Assembly: GCA_937625935.1 (NCBI GenBank)
Contig: OW569371.1
Span: forward strand, 310,001 to 374,000
Length of the DNA: 64,000 nt
Direction: 5' to 3'
Source of the DNA: Tetramitus jugosus
Taxonomy: Eukaryota; Protista; Heterolobosea
Under the pieces are notes generated by a model. That model searched no databases and was not told where the DNA came from. It saw only the letters and a program-made list of their open reading frames with translations. Positions within the stretch are counted from its first letter, which is position 1; every line of letters starts with the position of its first letter. The translations under genes were made by a program, and so were the position numbers. Below are positions 25,999-38,661 of the stretch, in pieces.

Positions 25999-26606
25999 CT
26001 CCTCTAAAGTACAAGTTAAAAAGGAAGCAAAAACTATTGAATTTGGAGGTGTGTTTGTTTTCGTCTGTGTAGAAAGCAAATTGTTCAAGGCTTCGTGAAA
26101 AAATCGTAACGGCGATTTTGGCGCAGCGCGAGACGATAACTGTCGGGTGAACCTTACAAATTTCGTACAGTACGAAACATGTCGAACAGGAAGAGTCCAG
26201 ATTTCGGATATCTCATCTCGACTTGTCGGCTCCATATGTTGATGAACGATGCCAAAAAATGGCATCTTTACACAAACCTCAAAATGCCTCTGTTGGCCTT
26301 GCAAGCACCAATCATTTCTCGTGGAGCTCCCTGTTATTCAGTGAGCACTCATCTCTTATACACACGAGACTCTTGATTCATGATCTCTCATGCATGACCA
26401 TGTTGTGTCGGAGTGTGCTGTCAAGCTGGGTTGACTCGAAAAACTTTTGGCGCTTTTTTTTTCCACATTTTTCTCACCTTTCAAAGTTCTGTGCTCCGAA
26501 CTTTTGTCCTTTCATCAAAAAGCCCAGCTCGTTTCCCTTTGGCAAGACAAAAACCAACAACTCAGCCCAGACTTCACTCACATAAACCTCTCACACGAAC
26601 TCCACC

Positions 26607-29600
26607 ATGGCAAGGTACGACCTACTTTTTACATACTTGACGTCAAGATATCGAAACACAAAAAACTAACACTACTCATCATTTACAGAACATTCCAAAC
26701 TGCCCGCAAGAGCACTGGCGGAAAAGCACCAAGAAGACAACTATCTGGTGGTATGCAATCTCCAGCACCATCTACTGCCCCTTTTAATTTTATTTCTCAT
26801 ACACTGTATGGAGCAGCTGCTACCGCAACCAGCGCTTCAAATGCAACAACGAGCAACAACACTATGCAAATAACCATCAGAACTCTGACTGGAAAGGGCA
26901 TCACACTGGACGTACAAGGTAATGATACCATTGAATCCCTGAAGCACAAGATTCAGGACAACGAAGGTATCCCTCCAGCGCAACAACGTTTGATTTGGGC
27001 TGGTAAACAATTGGAAGACGGAAGAACTCTCAGTGATTACAGCATTCAAAATGGTTCTACACTTCACTTGGTATTAAACCTCAGAGGTGATCATTCAGCA
27101 GCTACTACGAACGCTGCTGCTACCACTAGAGCAAAGAGACCATTGGAGGAGGAAGAAACCATTTCTACAAGCGGTGATGAGGAAGAAGCTACAGAGAAGC
27201 CTAAGAGCTCTCAAATATCTCTGAGCGACAGTGGAGCGAGTGATGGTGATGACGAAGGTGTAGAAGACACGTCACAAAAGACAGAAGTGTCTGCATCTCG
27301 TACGACAAAGAAAAAGAGTGGTGAATCAGCGGCAAAAAAGTCAAAAATTGTACAGGTGCAGCCAAGAGAACGTCACAGCAGACGTTCAAAGCAAGTGGCT
27401 GAAGATTCGCTCAAGAAGACTTCCTACAACGTTGACCTTGATATCAGGAAGGAATTGAAACACATTATCTCTGTGGCAAGTGATAGTGAGTATAGTGGTG
27501 CTGAGTCTCATGGTTCTGATGCTGAAGACGATGAAGAATTTTCTGACGCTCCAAAAAAGGAGAGAAAACCAAGAGAGAAGAAACCAAGAGCGCCTCGAGG
27601 AACTGCCAAGAAAGCGAGAGCACCTCGCGCCAAGAAGGAAAAGGTTGCAAAGGCACCCAAGAAGCCAAGACCTTCTCCATGTACTTTTACACCAACACCT
27701 GAGCTCATTGAAAAGTTGGAAAAGATGACTGATGAGACATTTTCAAATAAGTCCAAGGATATTGTTACTGGTTGCAGTCCAATTGTTTCCAGTCGAGAGG
27801 CAATCAGAGCAGTTCTCATCAAGGATCATGAGCTATTGCAAAGAGTTGTGAACGATTTCGATCATGTGAATAACTATTTGATTGAGAGAGGAGTTGACTG
27901 TGATACTCTGCTCTTGATCTCGCATTGAGAGCAAATGATCTGGAGGCTGCCAAAATCATCATGAAGGGACCAACCATTTCTCCTGCAAATAAGTCGAGAG
28001 TGACAACATCTAGCAGTTTGAATAATCACAACACTGGGTCTTATTCCCGCTTTACTTATGGTAGAAATATTCGAGCCATTCATGCCGCTAGAGGATCCAA
28101 GGAAGGAGTTAACGCTTTGACAAAGGATGGATCCAACTATTCTACTTATCATTCAGTTAATCACAAGTCTGCAGTTTCTGCTCTTAAATATCCTTTAACC
28201 AAGGATACTGTTAGTTTCCTGCTGACAGATTTTAATCGTTGGACGTTAGAAGATTCAGGAATGTATGAAGTAGTCGAAGCAGGTAACTTGGATGTTGCAT
28301 TGTATTTGGCTGAAAGTATTTCTGGATATGGCGCAGGATTAAATACTCTTCATATTGAAGCCCTAAAGCTGAGAAATGACGATGAACAGTTTTCAAAGTA
28401 TCAAGTAAGATCTGTAACGAAGAAGGGAGGTCAAAATGGTATTACACCGCTTCATTTTGCAGCAATCAATCCAAATCCAAAGTTTTTGACCGAACTCGCT
28501 TCTCAAGTTGGTATTCATATTGTTGATGCAAAGAATAGAAAACCAATTCATTTTGCTGCTGCATGTACAACATCTGCCACCGTCAAGGTGTTGCTTGAAA
28601 AGGGAGCCGCGTTAGATGAAGGTGATAAAACAAAGAGAATCCCTCTTCACTATGCAGCAAAGGCAGGCAGAGTTCACAACATTGAACATCTTTTGCCTGA
28701 AGATATGCTCCACTTGGCTAATATCAAGGACACCTTTGGATTTACACCAATGCATATTGCTGCGTACTACGGTCATCACGAGTTCGTCAAGGAATTATTG
28801 GGTAGAGGTGTTGATGTCAATGTTTTGGACACTAGAAAGGAAACTCCATTGTTCTCTGCTGCTAAGGCTGGTCACTTGGAAGTTGTCAAGGTGTTGGTTG
28901 AACATGGTGCTTCTCTTGCTAAACAAGATAAACACAGAAGATGTGCACTTTTGCTTGCTGTAATGAATGGACATTACGAAGTTTCAAAGTACTTGATTAT
29001 GCATGGAGCCAATCCAAATGCTGCCGATAGTTCCAATAATTTTGCTATGCACTATGCATGTGCTTATGGATGGTTGAACATTGTCAAGATGCTTCACAAG
29101 GCTGGGGCTAACTTGAATTCATTCAATGATTGGAAAAAGACTCCTCTTAGTGTTGCATTCTTGAAGGGTTTCATTGGTATCTGTGACTATCTGCTCAGTT
29201 TCCCTGAAGTTGATGTGAATATTCAAGATGAAAATGGTCAAACAATGTTGCATAACATTCTCACATCCAGAAATAATGATACTTTCAAATTGGCAAACTT
29301 TTTGATTACAGAAAAGGGAGCTAAAGTCGATATCCTTGATTCGGGTGATAATTCACTCTTCCACATCCTCTGTAGCTCAAAGCACGATGATGACTTGAAG
29401 ATAGCAGAACTATTGCTTCGACATCAAACACCACTTGATACAAACAACAAGGAAGATGTCAGACCTTTGGAAAAGGCATTATCTGTCCTAAATCTCACAA
29501 TGATCAAGTTCTTGCTTGAAAATAATGCTAGAGTTGAATACGAAAAACAAAAGTCCAATTTGTTGCATCGTATTATGGTTCAAACTGGTGATGGTATTCA

Positions 29601-32600
29601 AAAGTTGTTTGAGGCCTTAGTTACAGCCTTGCACGATCGTGACCAAGACCATTTATTGGTAGAGATGGCAAATTCAATTGATGAACGAGGTAGATTGCCA
29701 CTTCATGTCCTGCTTCAGAGTGTTACTCCTTCCTCAATTCTCAGAGGAGAGAAGTTCATCGACAATGAGGTGAATTCAGATGTTGAAATGGATGATTCAT
29801 CAATCAACAAACAATCCACCAAGCAAAAAGAGGTAGAACAAGAGGAAGATGATAATGACAGTGATAGTCGTGAGGAGCACATGAGTGACGAAGAAATTGG
29901 GGATGAAGACAGCGATCATGAAAATGAAGAAATGTCGGATGATGAGGAAGAAGAAGCATCTGTTCAATTTATTACTGGTCGATTCGAATCTACCGGTACT
30001 ACCAACATCACAAACAATGTGATACTCTTGACTTCTTTCCTGTCATATTATCTTGCTATCACCAAGTCTAATATCAACTCCCCAATTGTTGAGATTGAAC
30101 AAAAAGAACAAGAAAAGAAAAAACGCTCCGACAGCGACAGTGAACAAGATTCTGACGGCAGTAATGATGAATCTGGTAGCAGTGAGGATGATAGTGATAG
30201 TGATAATGGTTCATACAACTACGGTCTTCAAACCACTAACCAAAACCAAAAGATTAAGCAGGATAACATTGGATATACTCCACTTCATATTGTGGTTAAC
30301 GCTCTCAATGCCAGCTTGATAGAATATTTGATTGTCACTCTGAAAGCAAAGGTTAACGTCCAAGATGCCAAGGGAAGAACCCCACTTCACTTTGCAATGC
30401 ATTCTGCTGGTTCCAACGACCAGAACGCTTACGGTATTTGCAAGTACTTGGTATCACAAGGTGCTGACATGACTATGCTCGATTACCACGAGAGACCACC
30501 TGTGTTCTACTTGTTCACAAATCTCGTGAAAGCTTCAAATCAAGTTCAAACTCAAAGAGCATCTCCATTCTGGGGTTATCAACAACAACAACAACAACCT
30601 ACTAGTTCCAGTGCGGAACCAATTGAAATTTTGAGTGATTTCACAATTGTTACTGGATTCTCTGCTACACACAAGGATAAGGAACAAAGAACATTGCTTC
30701 ACTATACCTCGATGAAGGGATTCACTATTTGCAGCATGTTATTGATTCAGCTCGGTTGTGATATTAATGAAAAGGATAGGTTAGGTAATACTCCACTTGC
30801 CTACGCTATTCTAAATAAGCAAGTTGACTTTGGTGTTGGTTTGATTAATAAGGGTGCCGAATATGACATTGAAATTACTCAAGAAGTCACCAAAGCAGTT
30901 GAAGATGATTATTCATCTCGTACTACTATTGGAAAACGGGAAAAGAGTCAAACAGTTGTTGTGCAGGAGTCTGCTTCCCTGTTTAAGCATGCTCTCAAAA
31001 TTAATGCCTTTGGTCTCGCATTTTTGCTCGAGTCCAAAGAGATTGAGCCAACAAGAGCAATTAATGACGCACTTGAAACCCAAATGTACCAAATGGCGGC
31101 TAATCTCATCTCCAAGTCTCCTTCTGATGCTCTAAAGAGTAAGAATTCGGAAACCGGTGAAAACCTACTTCACATTGTGTCAAAGTATTGTAGCTCTGGA
31201 TTCCAACCATACAGTAGAAAGCTGATCAAGTTACTCCATAATAGAGGTCTTAAGTTGGATGATGTTGACAACAATGGAAACACTCCACTTCATAATTCTG
31301 TGCTTATCAATGCGATCATCACAAACTATCTCTTGAAACATGGAGCCAAAGTTGATATTCAAGATCAAAACAAGATGAACGTATTGCACTTGGTGTCTCA
31401 TGACAATCATATGAAAGGATTGCCACAACTATTAGCAGCAACTGGTGCTAAGACCGCTATTAATGCGAAAGACAAGGATGGTAAGACTCCTTTGCACCAT
31501 GCAGTGTCCTATTCCAAGTTTGGTTCTTTCGAGAATGTTCAACTTGTTAACGACTTGGTTGGAGCAGGTGCCAAGTATGATATTGAAGATAACGAGAAAA
31601 AATCTCCTCTTTTCTATGCCCTGATGCAACAAAGTGGTACTATAGCAAATGCATTCAGACAATTATCCGCTCAAATCCCTAACTCTCTGAAGGACAAGGC
31701 TCAAAAGGAATACAGCAAATATTCTGAGGAATTCTTCAAATTACCAGGAAAATTCGTTGAGTTGGATGTTAAGACTGATGCAGAAAAGGCTCGAAGCGAA
31801 CTAGAAGCGAAACAAAAGCAAGTCCGTAGAAAGCCTACAGTTCATCGCGTCTTAAGAAAGCCAGGTCACAAGGTACTTTTGGACGAGGATGGAAAACCAT
31901 TCGATATCCTTCTGAACAAGGTTGAAGTGACAGCTGGTGAATTTGGTACTAACATGTTCTACAAACAACAAATTGTGCACAATACTGCTCAAGATTTGTA
32001 TGTCTTCCTCACCAATTGGGGTAGAGTAGGTGAGGCTGGACAACATCAACAAACTCCTCTATCCAAAGAAGAAGCAATTGTTGAATTCAAGAAGAATTTC
32101 AGAAGCAAAACTGCCAATCATTGGGATGAAAGAGACAACTTTAAGCAAGCAGCTGGAAAGTATGCAATTGTTGAATTATCCCAAACCACTATCAAAGAAA
32201 ATCTAAAGCCTATTGATCTCTCTAACGCTCCTGCATCCAAGCTAGATCCTAGAGTTCAGAATTTGATGGGTCTTTTGTGTGATATCACAATCATGCAGAA
32301 AAATTTGCAACATTATGGTGTTGATTTGACTATTGCCAGACTGCACAAGAAGCATTTGATGGCCGCATTAGATGTATTAAACAAAGCCAAGGAAGAACTT
32401 TCAAAGTTTGAAAAACCTGATGTGACTCCAATCGAGAAGAAGGAGGCTCTTGATGAAGTTTACAAACTGACAAGTCAATTCTATCAACTCATTCCTCATA
32501 CCCAATTCAGAGATAGTGCCATTCCTGCATTGCAAATGAGCGATGTAGCTCAAAAGAGAAAGATGCTAGAAGATTTGATTGACTTGCAGGTGACATCGAG

Positions 32601-33294
32601 AATCATTCTTGCCTCTACTGTCCAAGCAAAGACGATGAATCCTTTGGATTATACATACAATGCTATCAAGACTCATCTGAAACCTATTGGATCATCCGAT
32701 GAAGATTACAGTATTCTGTCTAAATTTATCAACAGAACTAAGCAGTACAAGATTTTGAATCTGTTCAGAGTGTGCAGAGAGGAGGAACAGGCAAGATTTA
32801 AACCTCACTTGGCTGACAAGAACAGAATGTTGCTTTTCCATGGAAGTTCTGTTACAAACTTCATTTCTATCCTATCACAAGGATTGAAGATTGCTCCACC
32901 TGAAGCCCCAGCAAGTGGTTATATGTTTGGCAAGGGTATTTACAGCGCTGATGTGGTTGAAAAATCTATTGGATACTGCAGTGGTAATTTGAGTGGTAAT
33001 GTGGTTTGCTTGTTATTGTGCGAGGTTGCCTTGGGTGATTGCTTCGAGTGTACATCAGGAGTCTACATGGAAAAGGCAATGCCTGGTTGTGGAAGTACAA
33101 AAGGAGTTGGACGAACTGGTCCAGATTTCTCCAAGAACTTTGTGACCTTTGATGGTATGAAAATACCTGCAGGCCCAATTATTACTTACAACCCACACGC
33201 AATTAATTCTTATAACTCGCTCAATTACAACGAGTATATTGTCTACGATGAAAGTAGAGTGAGAATCAGATACATGGTTCAACTCAAATTGTAA
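26607..33294 (+). CDS. Histone H3 tail-ubiquitin-ankyrin-WGR-PARP fusion (about 2200 aa); exon 1 26607-26614, exon 2 26689-33294 with a 1-nt frame break near 27905
   Basis: CCACC-ATG GCA AG, intron 26615-26688 (GTACGA..ACTAAC..TTTACAG), giving [21 protein letters not shown]. Ubiquitin-like domain 26864-27091, many TPLHxA ankyrins, NWGRVG at about 32017, PARP regulatory helices, LFHGS / GKGIY / YNEYIVY. Confidence 0.88.
26615..26688 (+). other. 74-nt spliceosomal intron in codon R2 of the H3-like tail
   Basis: GT donor, ACTAAC branch at 26665-26670, CAG acceptor; splicing restores the canonical H3 start MART. Confidence 0.92.
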
Positions 33295-33386: not shown

Positions 33387-34643
33387 TTATTGGAGCACAA
33401 AGTCTGTGACATCATCTGAAGGAGCCAACTGTGCTTGCACTGACTTGGCATGCTGCAGACACTTGTCATAAAATACTCTGAGTGCCTCTCTGAAAATGTC
33501 CTCTGGCCTCATCATACCTACACTCTCAATCGAGAAAATGTAATGATTCTTCAATCGAGCCAAATTAATCTTCTTGTCCCACTCGTCAGTTCGTATGCAC
33601 TCTCTGCACATGGTACAATCCCTAGGTCTTGCCACAATCGCTTCATCATCCTCGATATCAAACACCTTCATTGGACAAATATTGACCAATTCTTGAGCGT
33701 GCTTTCCAGTGATTCTCGCTGGCTTATCAGATGATCTCTGCTTGCCCTTGAACGATATTTCAGGCATCAAACGATAGGTTGCAGTGGCAACAGGTGAGAA
33801 TTTGGCATGATCCTTTCCAATGCCCTTGACACAGTAGCACTCGAGATCAATCTCCTGTCCAGGGTTCAACTTTGCAATCAAAATATCGTCAAACACTGGT
33901 TTAATCGGATTGTTCTTGAATCGCTGTGCTTGATCACCGATAGGCACCCACTCCAAATCACCAGAGTACACCTTTTGATGCTCATATTCCTCTGCATTGT
34001 AATTGTGTGGATTCGGTGTCTTCTTCCGATCGCACTTGACCTTCAATCGGAACAAGATTGTCTCATTGTCCATCAAATTGTCCGGAACAGTCCAAACTTC
34101 ACTGCTCAAATTGGCACCAATGGGCAAATAACCAGAGTGAGAAGGTGGGTATGGTCTGCTCGTGTCTTCCGTATTGGCCGAGTACTCACTCATTTGTTTG
34201 ACAGTGGATTGACTCTGGAGGCGTTGAAGTCTCGTGGGATCTGTGCCAGTCAATGGAGCAGAAGGGTAGTCAAACAGCCGAGGGTCCACCTGAATGGGAA
34301 TGAGACCCATTCGATGACACAGCACCTCATCCTGAACAATGCTCGTATTCTTGACAACAGAGATCCACTCGATTGCAACAGTGGGCACTTCGGAGATGAG
34401 AATTCGGCGAAAAGCATTGGCAATGGGTGCATCGACGCCCATCATATCAAACACGAGTTTGTCATGGGTGGACTCCTTGATTCGAATATCAAATTCACTT
34501 TGAAATGCTTCCATGGAGAATGAAAAGTCATAGTTGGGTCCAAATGAACCATGGTAGGAGATGGTGTTGGTTTGTGAGGGTGCGAATCGACCAATTTGGA
34601 CCTTGTTTTTCAAGTCTTCCATTTGTTTGGTAAGCTTGCTCAT
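33387..34643 (-). CDS. RPC40: RNA polymerase I/III shared subunit AC40
   Basis: IANAFRRILISEVPTVAIE, NTSIVQDEVLCHRMGLIP, GIGKDHAKFSPVATATYRLMP, CPMKVFDIED, CTMCRECIR. Confidence 0.97.
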   Translation of the reverse strand: MSKLTKQMEDLKNKVQIGRFAPSQTNTISYHGSFGPNYDFSFSMEAFQSEFDIRIKESTHDKLVFDMMGVDAPIANAFRRILISEVPTVAIEWISVVKNTSIVQDEVLCHRMGLIPIQVDPRLFDYPSAPLTGTDPTRLQRLQSQSTVKQMSEYSANTEDTSRPYPPSHSGYLPIGANLSSEVWTVPDNLMDNETILFRLKVKCDRKKTPNPHNYNAEEYEHQKVYSGDLEWVPIGDQAQRFKNNPIKPVFDDILIAKLNPGQEIDLECYCVKGIGKDHAKFSPVATATYRLMPEISFKGKQRSSDKPARITGKHAQELVNICPMKVFDIEDDEAIVARPRDCTMCRECIRTDEWDKKINLARLKNHYIFSIESVGMMRPEDIFREALRVFYDKCLQHAKSVQAQLAPSDDVTDFVLQ

Positions 34644-34890
34644 GTTCGTTTTCAGTTGTTTTCAGTTGTTGTTGGTTGCGTTTTTTTTTTCTATCTCAGT
34701 TTGGTGCACCATAGAAAATTCACACCAATTTTTGCGCGATGTGATTGTCCGCTGACTGGCATATTTTCATTGAAGTTTCAATAAGAAAAAGAAAAGCGCG
34801 CGAACAATTTTTTTTGAAGGAATTGTATTTTACATGCTGACCGCTACAAAATAGCCAATCCATAATGAATTGTTGAATTGTGGAACAAAT

Positions 34891-35523
34891 TCAGAATTCA
34901 GAAGACAAACGACCGACTACACACTTTTCCAACAATCGATCCAAATTGACCCACGAGTGATACTTGTCAAACAATTGAGTGGCGTCTCTCCCGGCACCCA
35001 ACATTAACTTTTCTACTCCACCTGGATGAAACTTCAAATAGGGAGTAATGTCATACACGATACCACGAATAATGATCCAACAATCGTCCTCCGTATTGTG
35101 TTTTTTGACTTCACTCTTTGGTATGGATAGGGACATGGGTGGATGCGGTGAGTGATGAGAGACGAATAGCTGATAGGATGGCAAGTGATTCTTTCTAAAA
35201 TCGGATTGAGCAGTAATTTGATACCATTTCAATAGTCCATTACCACCAGTGTTGACTTTTCTTCTGGGGAGAAATGCTTGTTGTTGTTGTTGTGATGTTG
35301 TAGTATTGGTAGTGGTAGTAGGGTTGCGCAGAAAGACTGGTGTCTTGTTTGGGATGTTGTTATTGTTACTGTTGTTGGTTGATAATGATGTACTGTCATT
35401 GTGATTGACAACTGTAATGGAGGGAGGCAAAAATGTTGTATGGTTGTTGTTGTCGTTGTTGGATGATGATTCAGTGTAGGTTGGGGAATCAGATGGTGTC
35501 CGTTGATGATTGGATAATGTCAT
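34891..35523 (-). CDS. Cytochrome b5-like heme-binding protein (like the CYB5R4 N-terminal module)
   Basis: [45 protein letters not shown], with both axial His residues. Confidence 0.9.
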
Positions 35524-35882
35524 TCTATCGTGTTAGTAGTGATTGATATAGTATGTACAAGTTGTGTTGACTCTTTTTTGTTTGTTGATGTTTGTTGGTG
35601 GTTGCAATCGCTCAGACGCGTTGGTGTATTTTCAGTGTTCTGGGGTGCGGACTCATGATATCCCGCAACCAGTCTTCCAGCCTCTGCTAGAACTCTGTTA
35701 CTCCGAGTTGTAAACTTGGTCAACTCTTTTTTCCTTGTCTAGTAGGAGAATAAAGTTGCGCCGCTCCATCATCATGCGTTTTTTTCTTCTCTCGCAGCTG
35801 TGGACCAGAGAAGAAAAAATCATCCTCCACACATACACGTTCACAACAATCATACACAAACTCAACAACAACGAAAAAAAAA

Positions 35883-36734
35883 ATGTTCAAGCAAGCAGTG
35901 AGAAAATCGACACAATTCAACACCAACAGAAAGAACACGACAGCATTCACCACTGCTCTCTCTCGCTTCCAAAAAGCCAATGCACATGACTTTACCATCA
36001 AGTGCTCCTTCCCATTGGCCGACATGGAGTCATTCAAATCTCAAGTCAAAACCAAGGGCAATGGCCAAGAAGTGACTCACTACAATTTTGAGACCACATT
36101 CTTTGACTGTGTACCAAAACAGTTTGACCAATCCACACAACCATTCCCCATCAACCCTGAAAAATTTGAATTGTACTCGCTGTCCAAGAGAGACATTTGG
36201 TTGAGATTGGTGAACAATGTGTGGATGTGTCAATCACCATTCAAGGACACCAAGGGTGAAACTCACTTGAACCTCCCCATTGATCAACGTGTGCCTCATT
36301 TTGACGAACAACATGGCGAAAAGGAAATTAGAAGAGAGTTGAATTTGCAACAGGATATGACTAGAGAGGCACGTGAAAAGATCAAGTTGCCATCTCTGCA
36401 AGAGGACTTGGCTGTCAGAATGGGTGTCGTTCCATATGCCAGCTTCAAGTACACACAAACCATTTACAACATGCCAGAAAACTTTGTCATGGACGTGTAC
36501 AGCACAGACTTTGGTTACAATATTGCTGTCATGTCATCTGTGGTGAAGAATGGCACTGAACTTGATTTGAGCAACCGATCTGCCACCATGATTACCAGTC
36601 TGGAAACTTTGGGCATTGAGATTGAAAAGGTGCCATACACCAAGTCTCTGATTCTCGAATGGATTGCCAGAAACAACAAGGATCACTATCAAGTGTTGGT
36701 CGATTCCAATATTGCCCCACCACTCGATCAATAA
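35883..36734 (+). CDS. CYTH/thiamine-triphosphatase-like protein, catalytically degenerate, putative mitochondrial presequence
   Basis: TFFD, DIWLR, YASF, TDFGY and YQVLVDSN blocks are collinear with THTPA; the N-terminus is basic/hydroxyl-rich with no acidic residues. Confidence 0.7.
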   Translation: MFKQAVRKSTQFNTNRKNTTAFTTALSRFQKANAHDFTIKCSFPLADMESFKSQVKTKGNGQEVTHYNFETTFFDCVPKQFDQSTQPFPINPEKFELYSLSKRDIWLRLVNNVWMCQSPFKDTKGETHLNLPIDQRVPHFDEQHGEKEIRRELNLQQDMTREAREKIKLPSLQEDLAVRMGVVPYASFKYTQTIYNMPENFVMDVYSTDFGYNIAVMSSVVKNGTELDLSNRSATMITSLETLGIEIEKVPYTKSLILEWIARNNKDHYQVLVDSNIAPPLDQ

Positions 36735-36855
36735 ACAATCTCTTTTTTCTTGGGGGACAAAATGCACAACATTTGTTTTTAAGTTGATGATGATTCATTT
36801 TTGGATGTGTTTCACATTTTCACAGGCGAAACTGAGAATGAGGGAAAAAACTTCT

Positions 36856-38661
36856 TTATCTCTTGAAAATGCTCTTTGGGAACAAGAATGGCAGACACTT
36901 TTCTTCGGCAATCAATGGACCGACAATCATGGCAGCACTCTTGATGAGCTTGAGTGATGTCCAGAGGGCACGAGGCGTAGGCAGTGGCCAACACTCGTAG
37001 AAGCAGCCTACAATGGCAACAGAGAAAAAGTGAGTCAACAGAATGTGATAGCTCTCCGTGAGACCAGACAGCAGAGCCACAGGTCCAGTCGCACAGATGC
37101 CACCCAGTTGGAAATAGTTGAACACTGCCTTCTTCATGTATGATCGCATGGGATCATTGTCACCTGGTGCAAAGATGGCATACAGTGCATTGGCCAGAAT
37201 GTTAATGGTGCTGGCATAGCGCTTTCTGCGATGACTGAGAATCTTCATGGCCTGATCAATCGCATCATAATCAGTCAAATCACTCACATCTCTCAACAGT
37301 TCACTCAACACTTGTACGTCACCAAATGCCACAGTCATGCCACCACCAGTCAACGGATGTCTCGTATTCAATGCATCACCCAACATGATGACACCACGTT
37401 TGCTAAACTCTAGATTGGCAGGCATTTCTCTGTTGAGTGCACATCGAATGTTGCCCTCTTCAATAGTCTTGATAAATGGCTCGTGCATGGACAATGGCAA
37501 CGATGGACAAACGTTATTCTTGAGAAACAGTGGCAATTTTTCATCAGTCAAATTAGGTGCGACACTACCAGGGAAATCAATCAACACTCTCACATCGGTG
37601 CTGCTGATGGGATAGCAGAGAACAGGTGCAGGATCAACCATGAACACATTGCCATGATTCTGGAATGGTAACAAGTGAGCTGCATTCTTTAGTTTGAGAC
37701 CGACAAAACAACTGGCAATCACAGTTTCACTCTGATTGAGTGATTTGGTAAATGTGCTGCCTGCACCATTGGCAACAATGACAAGTGCACTGGTGACTGA
37801 ACGTTTTTCATTGCCATCTAATGATGACACGTACTGCACTCCATGAACGATATTATTCTTGTCGTCAGCAGCATTAGCAGTAGTAGCAGTATGAGTAGTA
37901 GTAGCATTAGTGGTAGCATTAGTAGTAGCAGTCGTCGTGTGATTCGGGAGAGGAGAGTAGAGAAAGCCACAGACTGATCCTTGAATCAGGGTCAATTGAC
38001 TCTGTTTGTCCTTGCCCATGCTCTGTGCTCTTCTTCTCAAATTCATGATGAATTTACCATAGTGGAAACTTCTGCCATGATACTTTTCACTTGTTGATGG
38101 ACTATTGTTGTTATTATTGTTCATAAAGTCTCTGTTTGGATAGGGCAAATGAACACGTTCATTTCCATAGAATACACCATAACCATTCATGTATGGTGAA
38201 TCAATACCCTCCAAACACTCTCCAAATCCCAATTGTTTCAACTTTTCAACACCACCTGGTTGCAACAATTCTCCTACAATACGATCTGGTTCATTCAAAT
38301 CTCTCTCAATGATCAATACTTTTTTGCCTTGTTGAGCAAGAGATCCACCCACTGTACATCCAACAATACCTGCACCAATCACAATCACATCATAGTCATA
38401 CTTTTGATGGGTATTATTTGTTTGACCGACTGGTATGGTTGTTGTTGTATTGTTATTGTTGCTATTGTTGTTGTGACTGCTACCAAAGAGTTGAGAAATG
38501 GTGGATACAACAATCATAATGGTATAATAAATAACAGTGGCCATGAGTGCTACTTGAAGTGGTGTCATGGACATGAGAGTCTCTAGTGATGATGTAGTTG
38601 TAGTTGTTGCTGTTTGCATATTGTGGTTGTTGTTGTTTGTAAAGGATGACAAGGATGACAT
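36856..38661 (-). CDS. ERG1: Squalene epoxidase (monooxygenase)
   Basis: VIVIGAGIVG, EPDRIVGELLQPGG, GRSFHYGKF, GDALNTRHPLTGGGMTVA, INILANALY. Confidence 0.97.
   Translation of the reverse strand: MSSLSSFTNNNNHNMQTATTTTTSSLETLMSMTPLQVALMATVIYYTIMIVVSTISQLFGSSHNNNSNNNNTTTTIPVGQTNNTHQKYDYDVIVIGAGIVGCTVGGSLAQQGKKVLIIERDLNEPDRIVGELLQPGGVEKLKQLGFGECLEGIDSPYMNGYGVFYGNERVHLPYPNRDFMNNNNNNSPSTSEKYHGRSFHYGKFIMNLRRRAQSMGKDKQSQLTLIQGSVCGFLYSPLPNHTTTATTNATTNATTTHTATTANAADDKNNIVHGVQYVSSLDGNEKRSVTSALVIVANGAGSTFTKSLNQSETVIASCFVGLKLKNAAHLLPFQNHGNVFMVDPAPVLCYPISSTDVRVLIDFPGSVAPNLTDEKLPLFLKNNVCPSLPLSMHEPFIKTIEEGNIRCALNREMPANLEFSKRGVIMLGDALNTRHPLTGGGMTVAFGDVQVLSELLRDVSDLTDYDAIDQAMKILSHRRKRYASTINILANALYAIFAPGDNDPMRSYMKKAVFNYFQLGGICATGPVALLSGLTESYHILLTHFFSVAIVGCFYECWPLPTPRALWTSLKLIKSAAMIVGPLIAEEKCLPFLFPKSIFKR

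What the first reader, a model, noticed from the sequence alone, without database searches (positions are those of the whole stretch)
26607..33294. PARP carrying its own histone H3 tail and ubiquitin: candidate histone-mimic ADP-ribosylation system
Seen: removing a clean 74-nt intron gives N-terminal (M)[21 protein letters not shown], identical to H3 residues 1-21 at 18 positions and in the same N-terminal register. No histone fold follows. Instead come a ubiquitin domain, acidic and basic tracts, ankyrin arrays, WGR, PARP regulatory and H-Y-E catalytic domains. Known: the H3 K9-S10 'KS' motif is a main serine-ADP-ribosylation acceptor, and K9, S10 and K14 are written and read by SUV39/HP1, Aurora B and acetyltransferases. 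Ankyrin-WGR-PARP enzymes exist in amoebae and nematodes. Inference: this enzyme may use a private histone code for recruitment or regulation, as an automodification acceptor, or as bait or decoy for host or pathogen histone modifiers. I do not know this architecture. H3-tail-like N-termini on other protist proteins may have been reported, so the literature needs checking.
Basis: partly seen in the sequence, partly recalled or inferred. Interest (0 to 1): 0.93.

Follow-up and report, generated by a model that had tools for sequence, protein, structure and literature searches.

The report
PARP carrying a histone H3 tail
This soil amoeba's ADP-ribosylating enzyme starts with a copy of the histone H3 tail, and its relatives in several distant protist groups carry the same tail, mostly placed so that its first residue can be exposed, which points to an apparently undescribed use of histone mimicry to aim or trigger the enzyme.

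Summary
RNA contigs from three studies splice the 74-nt intron, giving an N-terminus matching H3 at 18 of 21 residues, then a non-cleavable ubiquitin domain, ankyrins, WGR, regulatory and H-Y-E PARP domains. The window lacks one base at ~27900, so the frame is broken here; other strains are open there, but one has a different frameshift. The protein is a known ankyrin-type Clade 1A PARP of a heterolobosean (probably Tetramitus jugosus).

The tail is not unique: N-terminal in Willaertia and Moneuplotes; internal in Salpingoeca, Pyxidicula and unidentified protists (8 of 93 family members; 0 of 166 controls). Most internal tails sit in one exposed loop directly behind LxGG (a ubiquitin-type cleavage site) or behind a Hint domain ending His-Asn, so three routes would give a free Ala1. 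The conserved core is residues 1-3 and 5-8; K4, K9 and S10 vary, and HPF1 contacts are absent, which weakens the serine-acceptor idea. Best reading: a ligand for readers of the free H3 N-terminus (0.45); rival: bait for pathogen effectors (0.25). No paper describing this was found. The scan noted other H3-like tails in this genome (unchecked), but not this family pattern.

The parts
26561..26606 (+). 5' UTR (at least this long), strong Kozak-type context before the ATG
   Evidence: cDNA contig L010 starts at 26561; X3 contig from 26576
26607..26614 (+). Exon 1: Met, Ala1 and two bases of Arg2
26615..26688 (+). 74-nt GT-AG intron, phase 2 in the Arg2 codon
   Evidence: skipped in RNA contigs X1, X2, X3 and L010; kept in DNA run X4
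26689..26743 (+). Rest of the H3-tail mimic (residues 2-20); Phe in place of Lys4 (Val in allele L010), Arg in place of Lys18
26741..26758 (+). L-S-G-G followed by M-Q directly after the tail: a possible ubiquitin-type cleavage site (inference; may be chance)
   Evidence: sequence
26864..27091 (+). Ubiquitin-like domain ending L-R-G-D (no di-glycine); L8, I44, V70, K48 kept
   Evidence: Pfam PF00240 E 2.5e-27; residues
27092..27724 (+). Disordered acidic and basic tracts; A6 run after 27333 is A7 (frameshift) in the X2/L010 allele
27900..27903 (+). One-base frame break in this assembly, inside the first ankyrin-like repeat
   Evidence: all four runs and L010 have one more base
27725..31690 (+). 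Ankyrin arrays (approximate limits) with the family-specific N-terminal block
29689..30260 (+). Split ankyrin repeat with acidic insert: the loop in which relatives carry internal H3 tails (approximate end)
31903..32142 (+). WGR domain, W-G-R intact
32236..32658 (+). PARP regulatory (helical) domain
32701..33294 (+). PARP catalytic domain, His (32839), Tyr (32941), Glu (33232); ends short of the PARP1 Leu-Trp C-terminus; stop at 33292-33294

Best explanation
The gene encodes an ankyrin-WGR-PARP (Clade 1A) whose H3 tail is a selected ligand module. What matters is a free N-terminal Ala1 followed by R2-T3-x-Q5-T6-A7-R8. Here Met removal exposes it (inferred from the usual MetAP rule); in relatives a ubiquitin-type LxGG cut or Hint C-terminal self-cleavage would expose it (inferred). 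The exposed peptide most likely binds the host's own readers of the unmodified H3 N-terminus (PHD, WD40, ZZ or BIR type pockets; own knowledge), tethering a nucleic-acid-activated PARP to chromatin complexes or competing with nucleosomal H3, and switchable by marks on R2, T3 or R8. Shown: gene structure, expression, recurrence, position behind cleavage-type motifs, conserved core. Inferred: cleavage, binding partner, localisation, catalytic activity.
For: Tail in 8/93 full-length family members found without using the tail as query, versus 0/61 PARP1-like and 0/105 other ankyrin proteins; shuffles 0.05-0.4. True N-terminal tails in Willaertia magna KAL9658090.1 and Moneuplotes crassus CAI2359252.1, whose ATG lies just inside a telomere. 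Eight internal tails, in about five lineages, follow LxGG exactly; background LxGG rate 2e-4 per residue. In Pyxidicula operculata a Hint domain ends His-Asn directly before Ala1, has Gly where the N-terminal nucleophile would be, and best matches Tetrahymena BIL2 (6y75, E 2e-6). Internal tails lie in one split ankyrin repeat; AlphaFold2 shows that loop disordered and exposed between two long helices. Residues 1-3 and 5-8 conserved. Other family members carry other chromatin-binding modules: chromodomain PF00385 in three fungal members and an RRSxR[LI] motif in 9/86 N-termini versus 0.045 in shuffles (its role as a nucleosome anchor is own knowledge). Reference titles in PMC2964712 describe C. 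elegans PME-5 as nuclear and chromosome-linked. SNPs among strains are 30 synonymous to 9 non-synonymous.
Against: No binding, cleavage or localisation data. About 90% of family members, including Naegleria lovaniensis, Dictyostelium and animals, have no tail, so it is dispensable. Three internal tails lack a clear site (P0309, P0192) or have Gly for Ala1 (P0262). Deubiquitinases usually need a ubiquitin fold before the LxGG, and none is present in those loops. Two of about five alleles seen are frameshifted, and one has F4V.
Confidence: 0.45

Rival explanations
1. Integrated decoy: the tail (and the LxGG site) is bait for effectors of intracellular bacteria or giant viruses that bind, modify or cut H3 tails or ubiquitin junctions; engagement triggers the PARP or titrates the effector.
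For: Patchy distribution: 10-11 changes of state on the tree, one clade rejected at p-AU 8e-6. Named carriers are bacterivorous protists. Legionella RomA, an effector of a pathogen that replicates in protozoa, binds H3 Thr3-Ala7 with its ankyrins and methylates K14 (PMC10653858), overlapping the conserved core. Frameshifted alleles in natural populations fit a conflict gene. H3 tails also occur on unrelated large protist proteins.
Against: No sign of gene-family expansion or excess amino-acid change in the data seen (30 syn, 9 nonsyn). A decoy for K4/K9/K14 modifiers should keep those lysines; many tails do not. Neighbours are housekeeping genes.
Confidence: 0.25
2. Cis pseudo-ligand: the enzyme's own ankyrin array reads H3 tails, and the attached copy occupies that groove as an autoinhibitory or latch element.
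For: Ankyrin repeats can bind H3 T3-A7 (PMC10653858). Ankyrin-B structures with autoinhibitory segments are top fold matches, though these are generic ankyrin hits.
Against: AlphaFold2 left the tail undocked (pLDDT under 50), a weak negative. Tail position differs by about 1000 residues between N-terminal and internal forms.
Confidence: 0.1
3. Automodification acceptor: the K9-S10 motif takes serine-linked ADP-ribose in cis.
For: K9-S10 is kept in the window protein and in the other long tails; H-Y-E intact.
Against: His826 and Leu1013-Trp1014 equivalents that bind HPF1 are missing (PMC12596734); S10 is lost in five of 13 tails; a free Ala1 would not be needed.
Confidence: 0.08
4. Near-neutral capture: 5' ends of abundant H3 genes are repeatedly fused into tolerant disordered regions and serve only as a basic, NLS-like tract, then decay.
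For: Scattered occurrence close to the shuffled expectation for changes (10 versus 12.3, range 9-13); degenerate tails exist; absent in Naegleria; frameshifted and F4V alleles. An internal G-G-A-R-T could also act uncleaved as a WDR5 WIN-like motif (own knowledge).
Against: Capture does not explain exact LxGG or Hint His-Asn directly before Ala1, the same insertion loop in distant lineages, enrichment over controls, or retention of residues 1-8 while 9-20 decay.
Confidence: 0.12

Closest known systems
Clade 1A / ankyrin-type Clade 1 PARPs (Citarelli 2010 PMC2964712; Perina 2014 PMC4245714): Dictyostelium Adprt3, C. elegans PME-5
   Same: Ankyrin repeats, WGR, regulatory and H-Y-E catalytic domains; tree places the protein with Willaertia and Naegleria members (SH-aLRT 93).
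   Different: N-terminal H3 tail and ubiquitin-like domain; neither paper mentions H3-like segments in these proteins.
Histone mimics in non-histone proteins (G9a automethylation PMC2175347; SetDB1 10.1101/2025.01.21.634156; viral mimics from own knowledge)
   Same: An H3-like peptide in a non-histone protein that can engage histone readers or writers.
   Different: Those are short internal or terminal motifs centred on one lysine; here up to 27 residues of the tail are copied, the core is residues 1-8, and the arrangement suggests a free Ala1 made by processing.
Tetrahymena BUBL loci (ubiquitin-like, BIL intein-like and ADP-ribosyltransferase domains; PMC8616854)
   Same: Combines ubiquitin-type processing, a BIL/Hint domain and an ADP-ribosyltransferase; BIL2 is the best PDB match of the Pyxidicula Hint.
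   Different: BUBL conjugates ubiquitin by splicing; no H3 tail, no ankyrin-WGR-PARP. The Pyxidicula Hint appears able to cut only at its C-terminus.
Tankyrases (Clade 4)
   Same: Ankyrin repeats plus PARP catalytic domain.
   Different: No SAM domain; WGR and regulatory domains present.
PARP1/2-HPF1 serine ADP-ribosylation
   Same: WGR, helical domain, H-Y-E triad.
   Different: No zinc fingers or BRCT; HPF1 contact residues absent.

Membership tests
Clade 1A ankyrin-type PARP | N-terminal ankyrin repeats | tested here: met
   Pfam Ank_2 E 8.7e-85
Clade 1A ankyrin-type PARP | WGR and PARP regulatory domain before a C-terminal catalytic domain | tested here: met
Clade 1A ankyrin-type PARP | Groups with Dictyostelium, fungal and ciliate ankyrin PARPs apart from PARP1 | tested here: met
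   tree, 88-row ingroup at SH-aLRT 100 against five PARP1 rows; no tankyrase or other clades were included
Clade 1A ankyrin-type PARP | H-Y-E triad | tested here: met
   alignment to rat PARP1
Clade 1A ankyrin-type PARP | Poly(ADP-ribosyl)ation activity | not testable with these tools
   needs an assay
Tankyrase (Clade 4) | SAM domain, no WGR or regulatory domain | tested here: not met
Histone H3 or variant | Histone fold after the tail | tested here: not met
   no PF00125 hit at E 0.1
HPF1-dependent serine PARP | His826 and C-terminal Leu1013-Trp1014 equivalents | tested here: not met
   PMC12596734
Cleavable ubiquitin fusion | Ubiquitin domain ending in Gly-Gly | tested here: not met
   ends L-R-G-D
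Histone mimic (functional sense) | Sequence match to a histone tail beyond chance | tested here: met
   18/21; controls
Histone mimic (functional sense) | Bound or modified by histone readers or writers | not testable with these tools
   needs pull-down or MS
BUBL-type locus | BIL/Hint domain between ubiquitin-like units | tested here: not met
   no Hint in the window protein; Hint only in Pyxidicula P0132, with no ubiquitin domain beside it

The most novel reading that the evidence does not exclude
Across at least four eukaryotic supergroups, Clade 1A PARPs repeatedly acquired an H3 N-terminal cassette that is unmasked by processing (Met removal, ubiquitin-type cleavage or Hint self-cleavage), forming a protease- or effector-triggered histone-mimic switch on an NAD-consuming enzyme, possibly a protist immune tripwire for pathogen nucleomodulins and deubiquitinases.
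Probability: 0.3. Interest if true: 0.92.

Novelty: new variant of a known kind. Interest (0 to 1): 0.78.

Why it matters
Clade 1A PARPs are ancient and widespread but have almost no assigned function. A recurrent H3-tail cassette, built to expose Ala1 by three different routes, gives a direct handle: it predicts the class of partners, a cleavage event and simple mutants. If it holds, it extends histone mimicry from short lysine motifs to a processed neo-N-terminus on a host enzyme, and links ubiquitin-type or Hint processing with ADP-ribosylation and chromatin reading in free-living protists that host Legionella-like bacteria. The same tail on unrelated large protist proteins suggests a wider, uncatalogued module.

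Tried and rejected
An intron as explanation of the 27900 break: no convincing GT-AG candidate and RNA contigs show a +1 base instead. Assembly chimera or gene-model fusion with a histone gene: rejected by the single cDNA contig L010 and lack of a histone fold. A missed tail exon in Naegleria lovaniensis: none in the 600 nt upstream. Exact look-up of a neighbour to name the organism failed. Viral contigs: no relative, with one pattern only. Single-sequence fold of tail plus ubiquitin was uninformative (pLDDT 41); Atlas gave only generic ubiquitin clusters under 0.9; fold search gave generic ankyrins. The first homology search returned mostly unrelated ankyrin proteins. A decayed Hint in the Pyxidicula paralogue P0250 is only suggestive. 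Ten literature searches found no paper on H3 tails in these PARPs; the library lacks most subscription journals. The HPF1 structure paper was not held; a review was used.

Full report
Observation. The ATG at 26607 lies in a strong context with no upstream ATG in 120 nt and an in-frame stop before it. Bases 26615-26688 form a 74-nt GT-AG intron. RNA contigs from two soil metatranscriptome studies skip exactly this interval, a third run (probably RNA) shows the same splice, and a DNA run keeps intron sequence. The spliced N-terminus matches canonical H3 at 18 of 21 residues, with Phe for Lys4, Arg for Lys18 and Ser for Ala21. No histone fold follows. Pfam finds ubiquitin, ankyrins, WGR, PARP regulatory and PARP catalytic domains. 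His, Tyr and Glu of the triad align with those of rat PARP1. The ubiquitin domain ends L-R-G-D and so should not be cut or conjugated.

Frame break. In the window the gene is two ORFs that overlap at 27925-27928. All four runs have one more base at 27900-27902, and cDNA contig L010 reads straight through there and joins exon 1, tail, ubiquitin and ankyrins from 26561 to 29900. The intact product is about 2204 aa, 245 kDa. These runs differ from the window at about 1% of sites, so they are other strains: the break may be an assembly error, one haplotype, or a real null in the sequenced strain. The X2/L010 allele (probably one sample) has a different frameshift, A7 for A6 after 27333, stopping at 240 aa, and Val at tail position 4. 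Listed SNPs are 30 synonymous to 9 non-synonymous, 8 to 2 before the break, so both halves are under purifying selection overall.

Organism and family. The nearest catalytic regions are Naegleria lovaniensis (44%) and Willaertia magna (42%), and the tree groups the protein with them (SH-aLRT 93). The scan has 56 pieces; the Tetramitus jugosus assembly has 55 scaffolds plus a mitochondrion and 41.3-41.5% GC (PMC11106597), like the window. T. jugosus is therefore likely but not verified. The architecture is Clade 1A of Citarelli 2010 and the ankyrin-type Clade 1 of Perina 2014, with Dictyostelium Adprt3 and C. elegans PME-5. Neither paper mentions H3-like segments.

The tail recurs. The Willaertia orthologue starts with H3 residues 1-27 almost unchanged and has no ubiquitin domain. 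A Moneuplotes crassus member starts with the tail just inside the telomere of its nanochromosome. Naegleria lovaniensis has none. Among 93 full-length family members collected with ankyrin or PARP queries, 8 carry a 6-of-8 or better match to H3 1-8, against 0 of 61 PARP1-like and 0 of 105 other ankyrin proteins; shuffles give 0.05-0.4. Carriers do not form one clade (p-AU 8e-6) and need 10-11 changes on the tree; gain cannot be told from loss.

Internal tails follow cleavage-type sites. Eight internal tails, in Salpingoeca infusionum and about four lineages of unidentified protists, come directly after LxGG (LYGG, LFGG, LRGG, LQGG, LKGG), and a degenerate one after LSGG; LxGG occurs at 2e-4 per residue in the family. 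In Pyxidicula operculata the tail follows a Hint domain that ends His-Asn, has Gly at the usual N-terminal nucleophile, and best matches Tetrahymena BIL2 (PMC8616854); from known intein chemistry this predicts C-terminal cleavage only. These tails sit in one loop inside a split ankyrin repeat. An AlphaFold2 model (72 rows, mean pLDDT 88) shows the loop disordered and exposed between two long helices, so a cut need not separate the halves. Exceptions: P0309 and P0192 lack a site and are degenerate; P0262 has Gly for Ala1. In the window protein the tail is itself followed by L-S-G-G then M-Q, which may be a further site or chance.

What is conserved. In 13 tails, R2, T3 and R8 are invariant; A1, T6 and A7 are kept in 12, Q5 in 11, K4 in 10, K9 and S10 in 8, K14 in 7 (several rows are close kin). 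The catalytic domains lack the His826 and Leu1013-Trp1014 equivalents that bind HPF1 (PMC12596734). So the family-level signal is a free H3 N-terminus, not the K9-S10 acceptor.

Mechanism. Best reading (0.45): the tail is a ligand for host readers of the unmodified H3 N-terminus, which tethers or positions a nucleic-acid-activated PARP. Other members use chromodomains or an RRSxR[LI] motif (9 of 86, shuffles 0.045), which fits interchangeable chromatin-targeting modules. Rival (0.25): bait for pathogen effectors; Legionella RomA grips H3 T3-A7 with ankyrins and methylates K14 (PMC10653858), carriers are bacterivores, and null alleles occur. Lesser rivals: neutral capture (0.12), cis ligand of its own ankyrins (0.10), serine acceptor (0.08). 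Cleavage, partners and activity are all inferred.

Wider context. A tail query against proteins of 1250-3970 aa gave 21 hits: 8 with a histone fold (probably fused gene models) and 13 without, of which 3 are Clade 1A PARPs (one is the query); the rest include oomycete, foraminiferan, rotifer and VIT-vWA proteins. The scan's own notes list further H3-like tails on F-box, BTB and A2M-like proteins of this genome; I did not check them.

Novelty. Family and histone mimicry are known; ten searches found no description of H3 tails on these PARPs or of the cleavage-site arrangement, within a library that lacks most subscription journals. I rate it a new variant of a known kind, interest 0.78.

Noticed in passing
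P0391, P0398, P0400, P0402, P0403, P0405, P0407-P0410: H3 tails without a histone fold on unrelated large proteins: oomycete proteins with no Pfam domain (N-terminal), a Nonionella stella protein with two tails, a rotifer vWA-RING-PI3K-like protein, a VIT-vWA-FG-repeat protein and an FHA-SET-2OG oxygenase.
   Followed up: partly
P0357, Diaphanoeca grandis, residue 1729: LTD-EF-hand-ubiquitin-ankyrin protein related to the family's N-terminal block, with an internal degenerate H3 tail.
   Followed up: partly
P0137, P0163, P0175: Fungal Clade 1A PARPs (Endogone, Powellomyces, Rhizophlyctis) carry a chromodomain hit.
   Followed up: no
P0250, Pyxidicula paralogue, residues ~1200-1365: Possible decayed Hint plus degenerate tail in the same loop; only an AXH-like hit supports it.
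   Followed up: partly
L004 206-7735: Clade 1A PARP transcript split by a single TGA that is probably read as an amino acid (ciliate-like code); tail lies just before it.
   Followed up: partly
window 27333 (X2, L010 699-701): A natural, transcribed allele with a frameshift in an A run and Val at tail position 4.
   Followed up: partly
window 18730-~26000, minus strand: Roughly 2400-aa coiled-coil gene with no Pfam hit, head to head with the PARP about 600 nt away; a shared promoter is possible.
   Followed up: no
window 33387-38661: Downstream neighbours are housekeeping genes: RNA polymerase Rpb3/AC40-type subunit (93 nt from the PARP stop, tail to tail), a cytochrome b5 domain protein and squalene epoxidase.
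   Followed up: partly
N-termini of 9 of 86 family members: RRSxR[LI] motif, resembling nucleosome acidic-patch anchors, far above shuffle expectation.
   Followed up: partly
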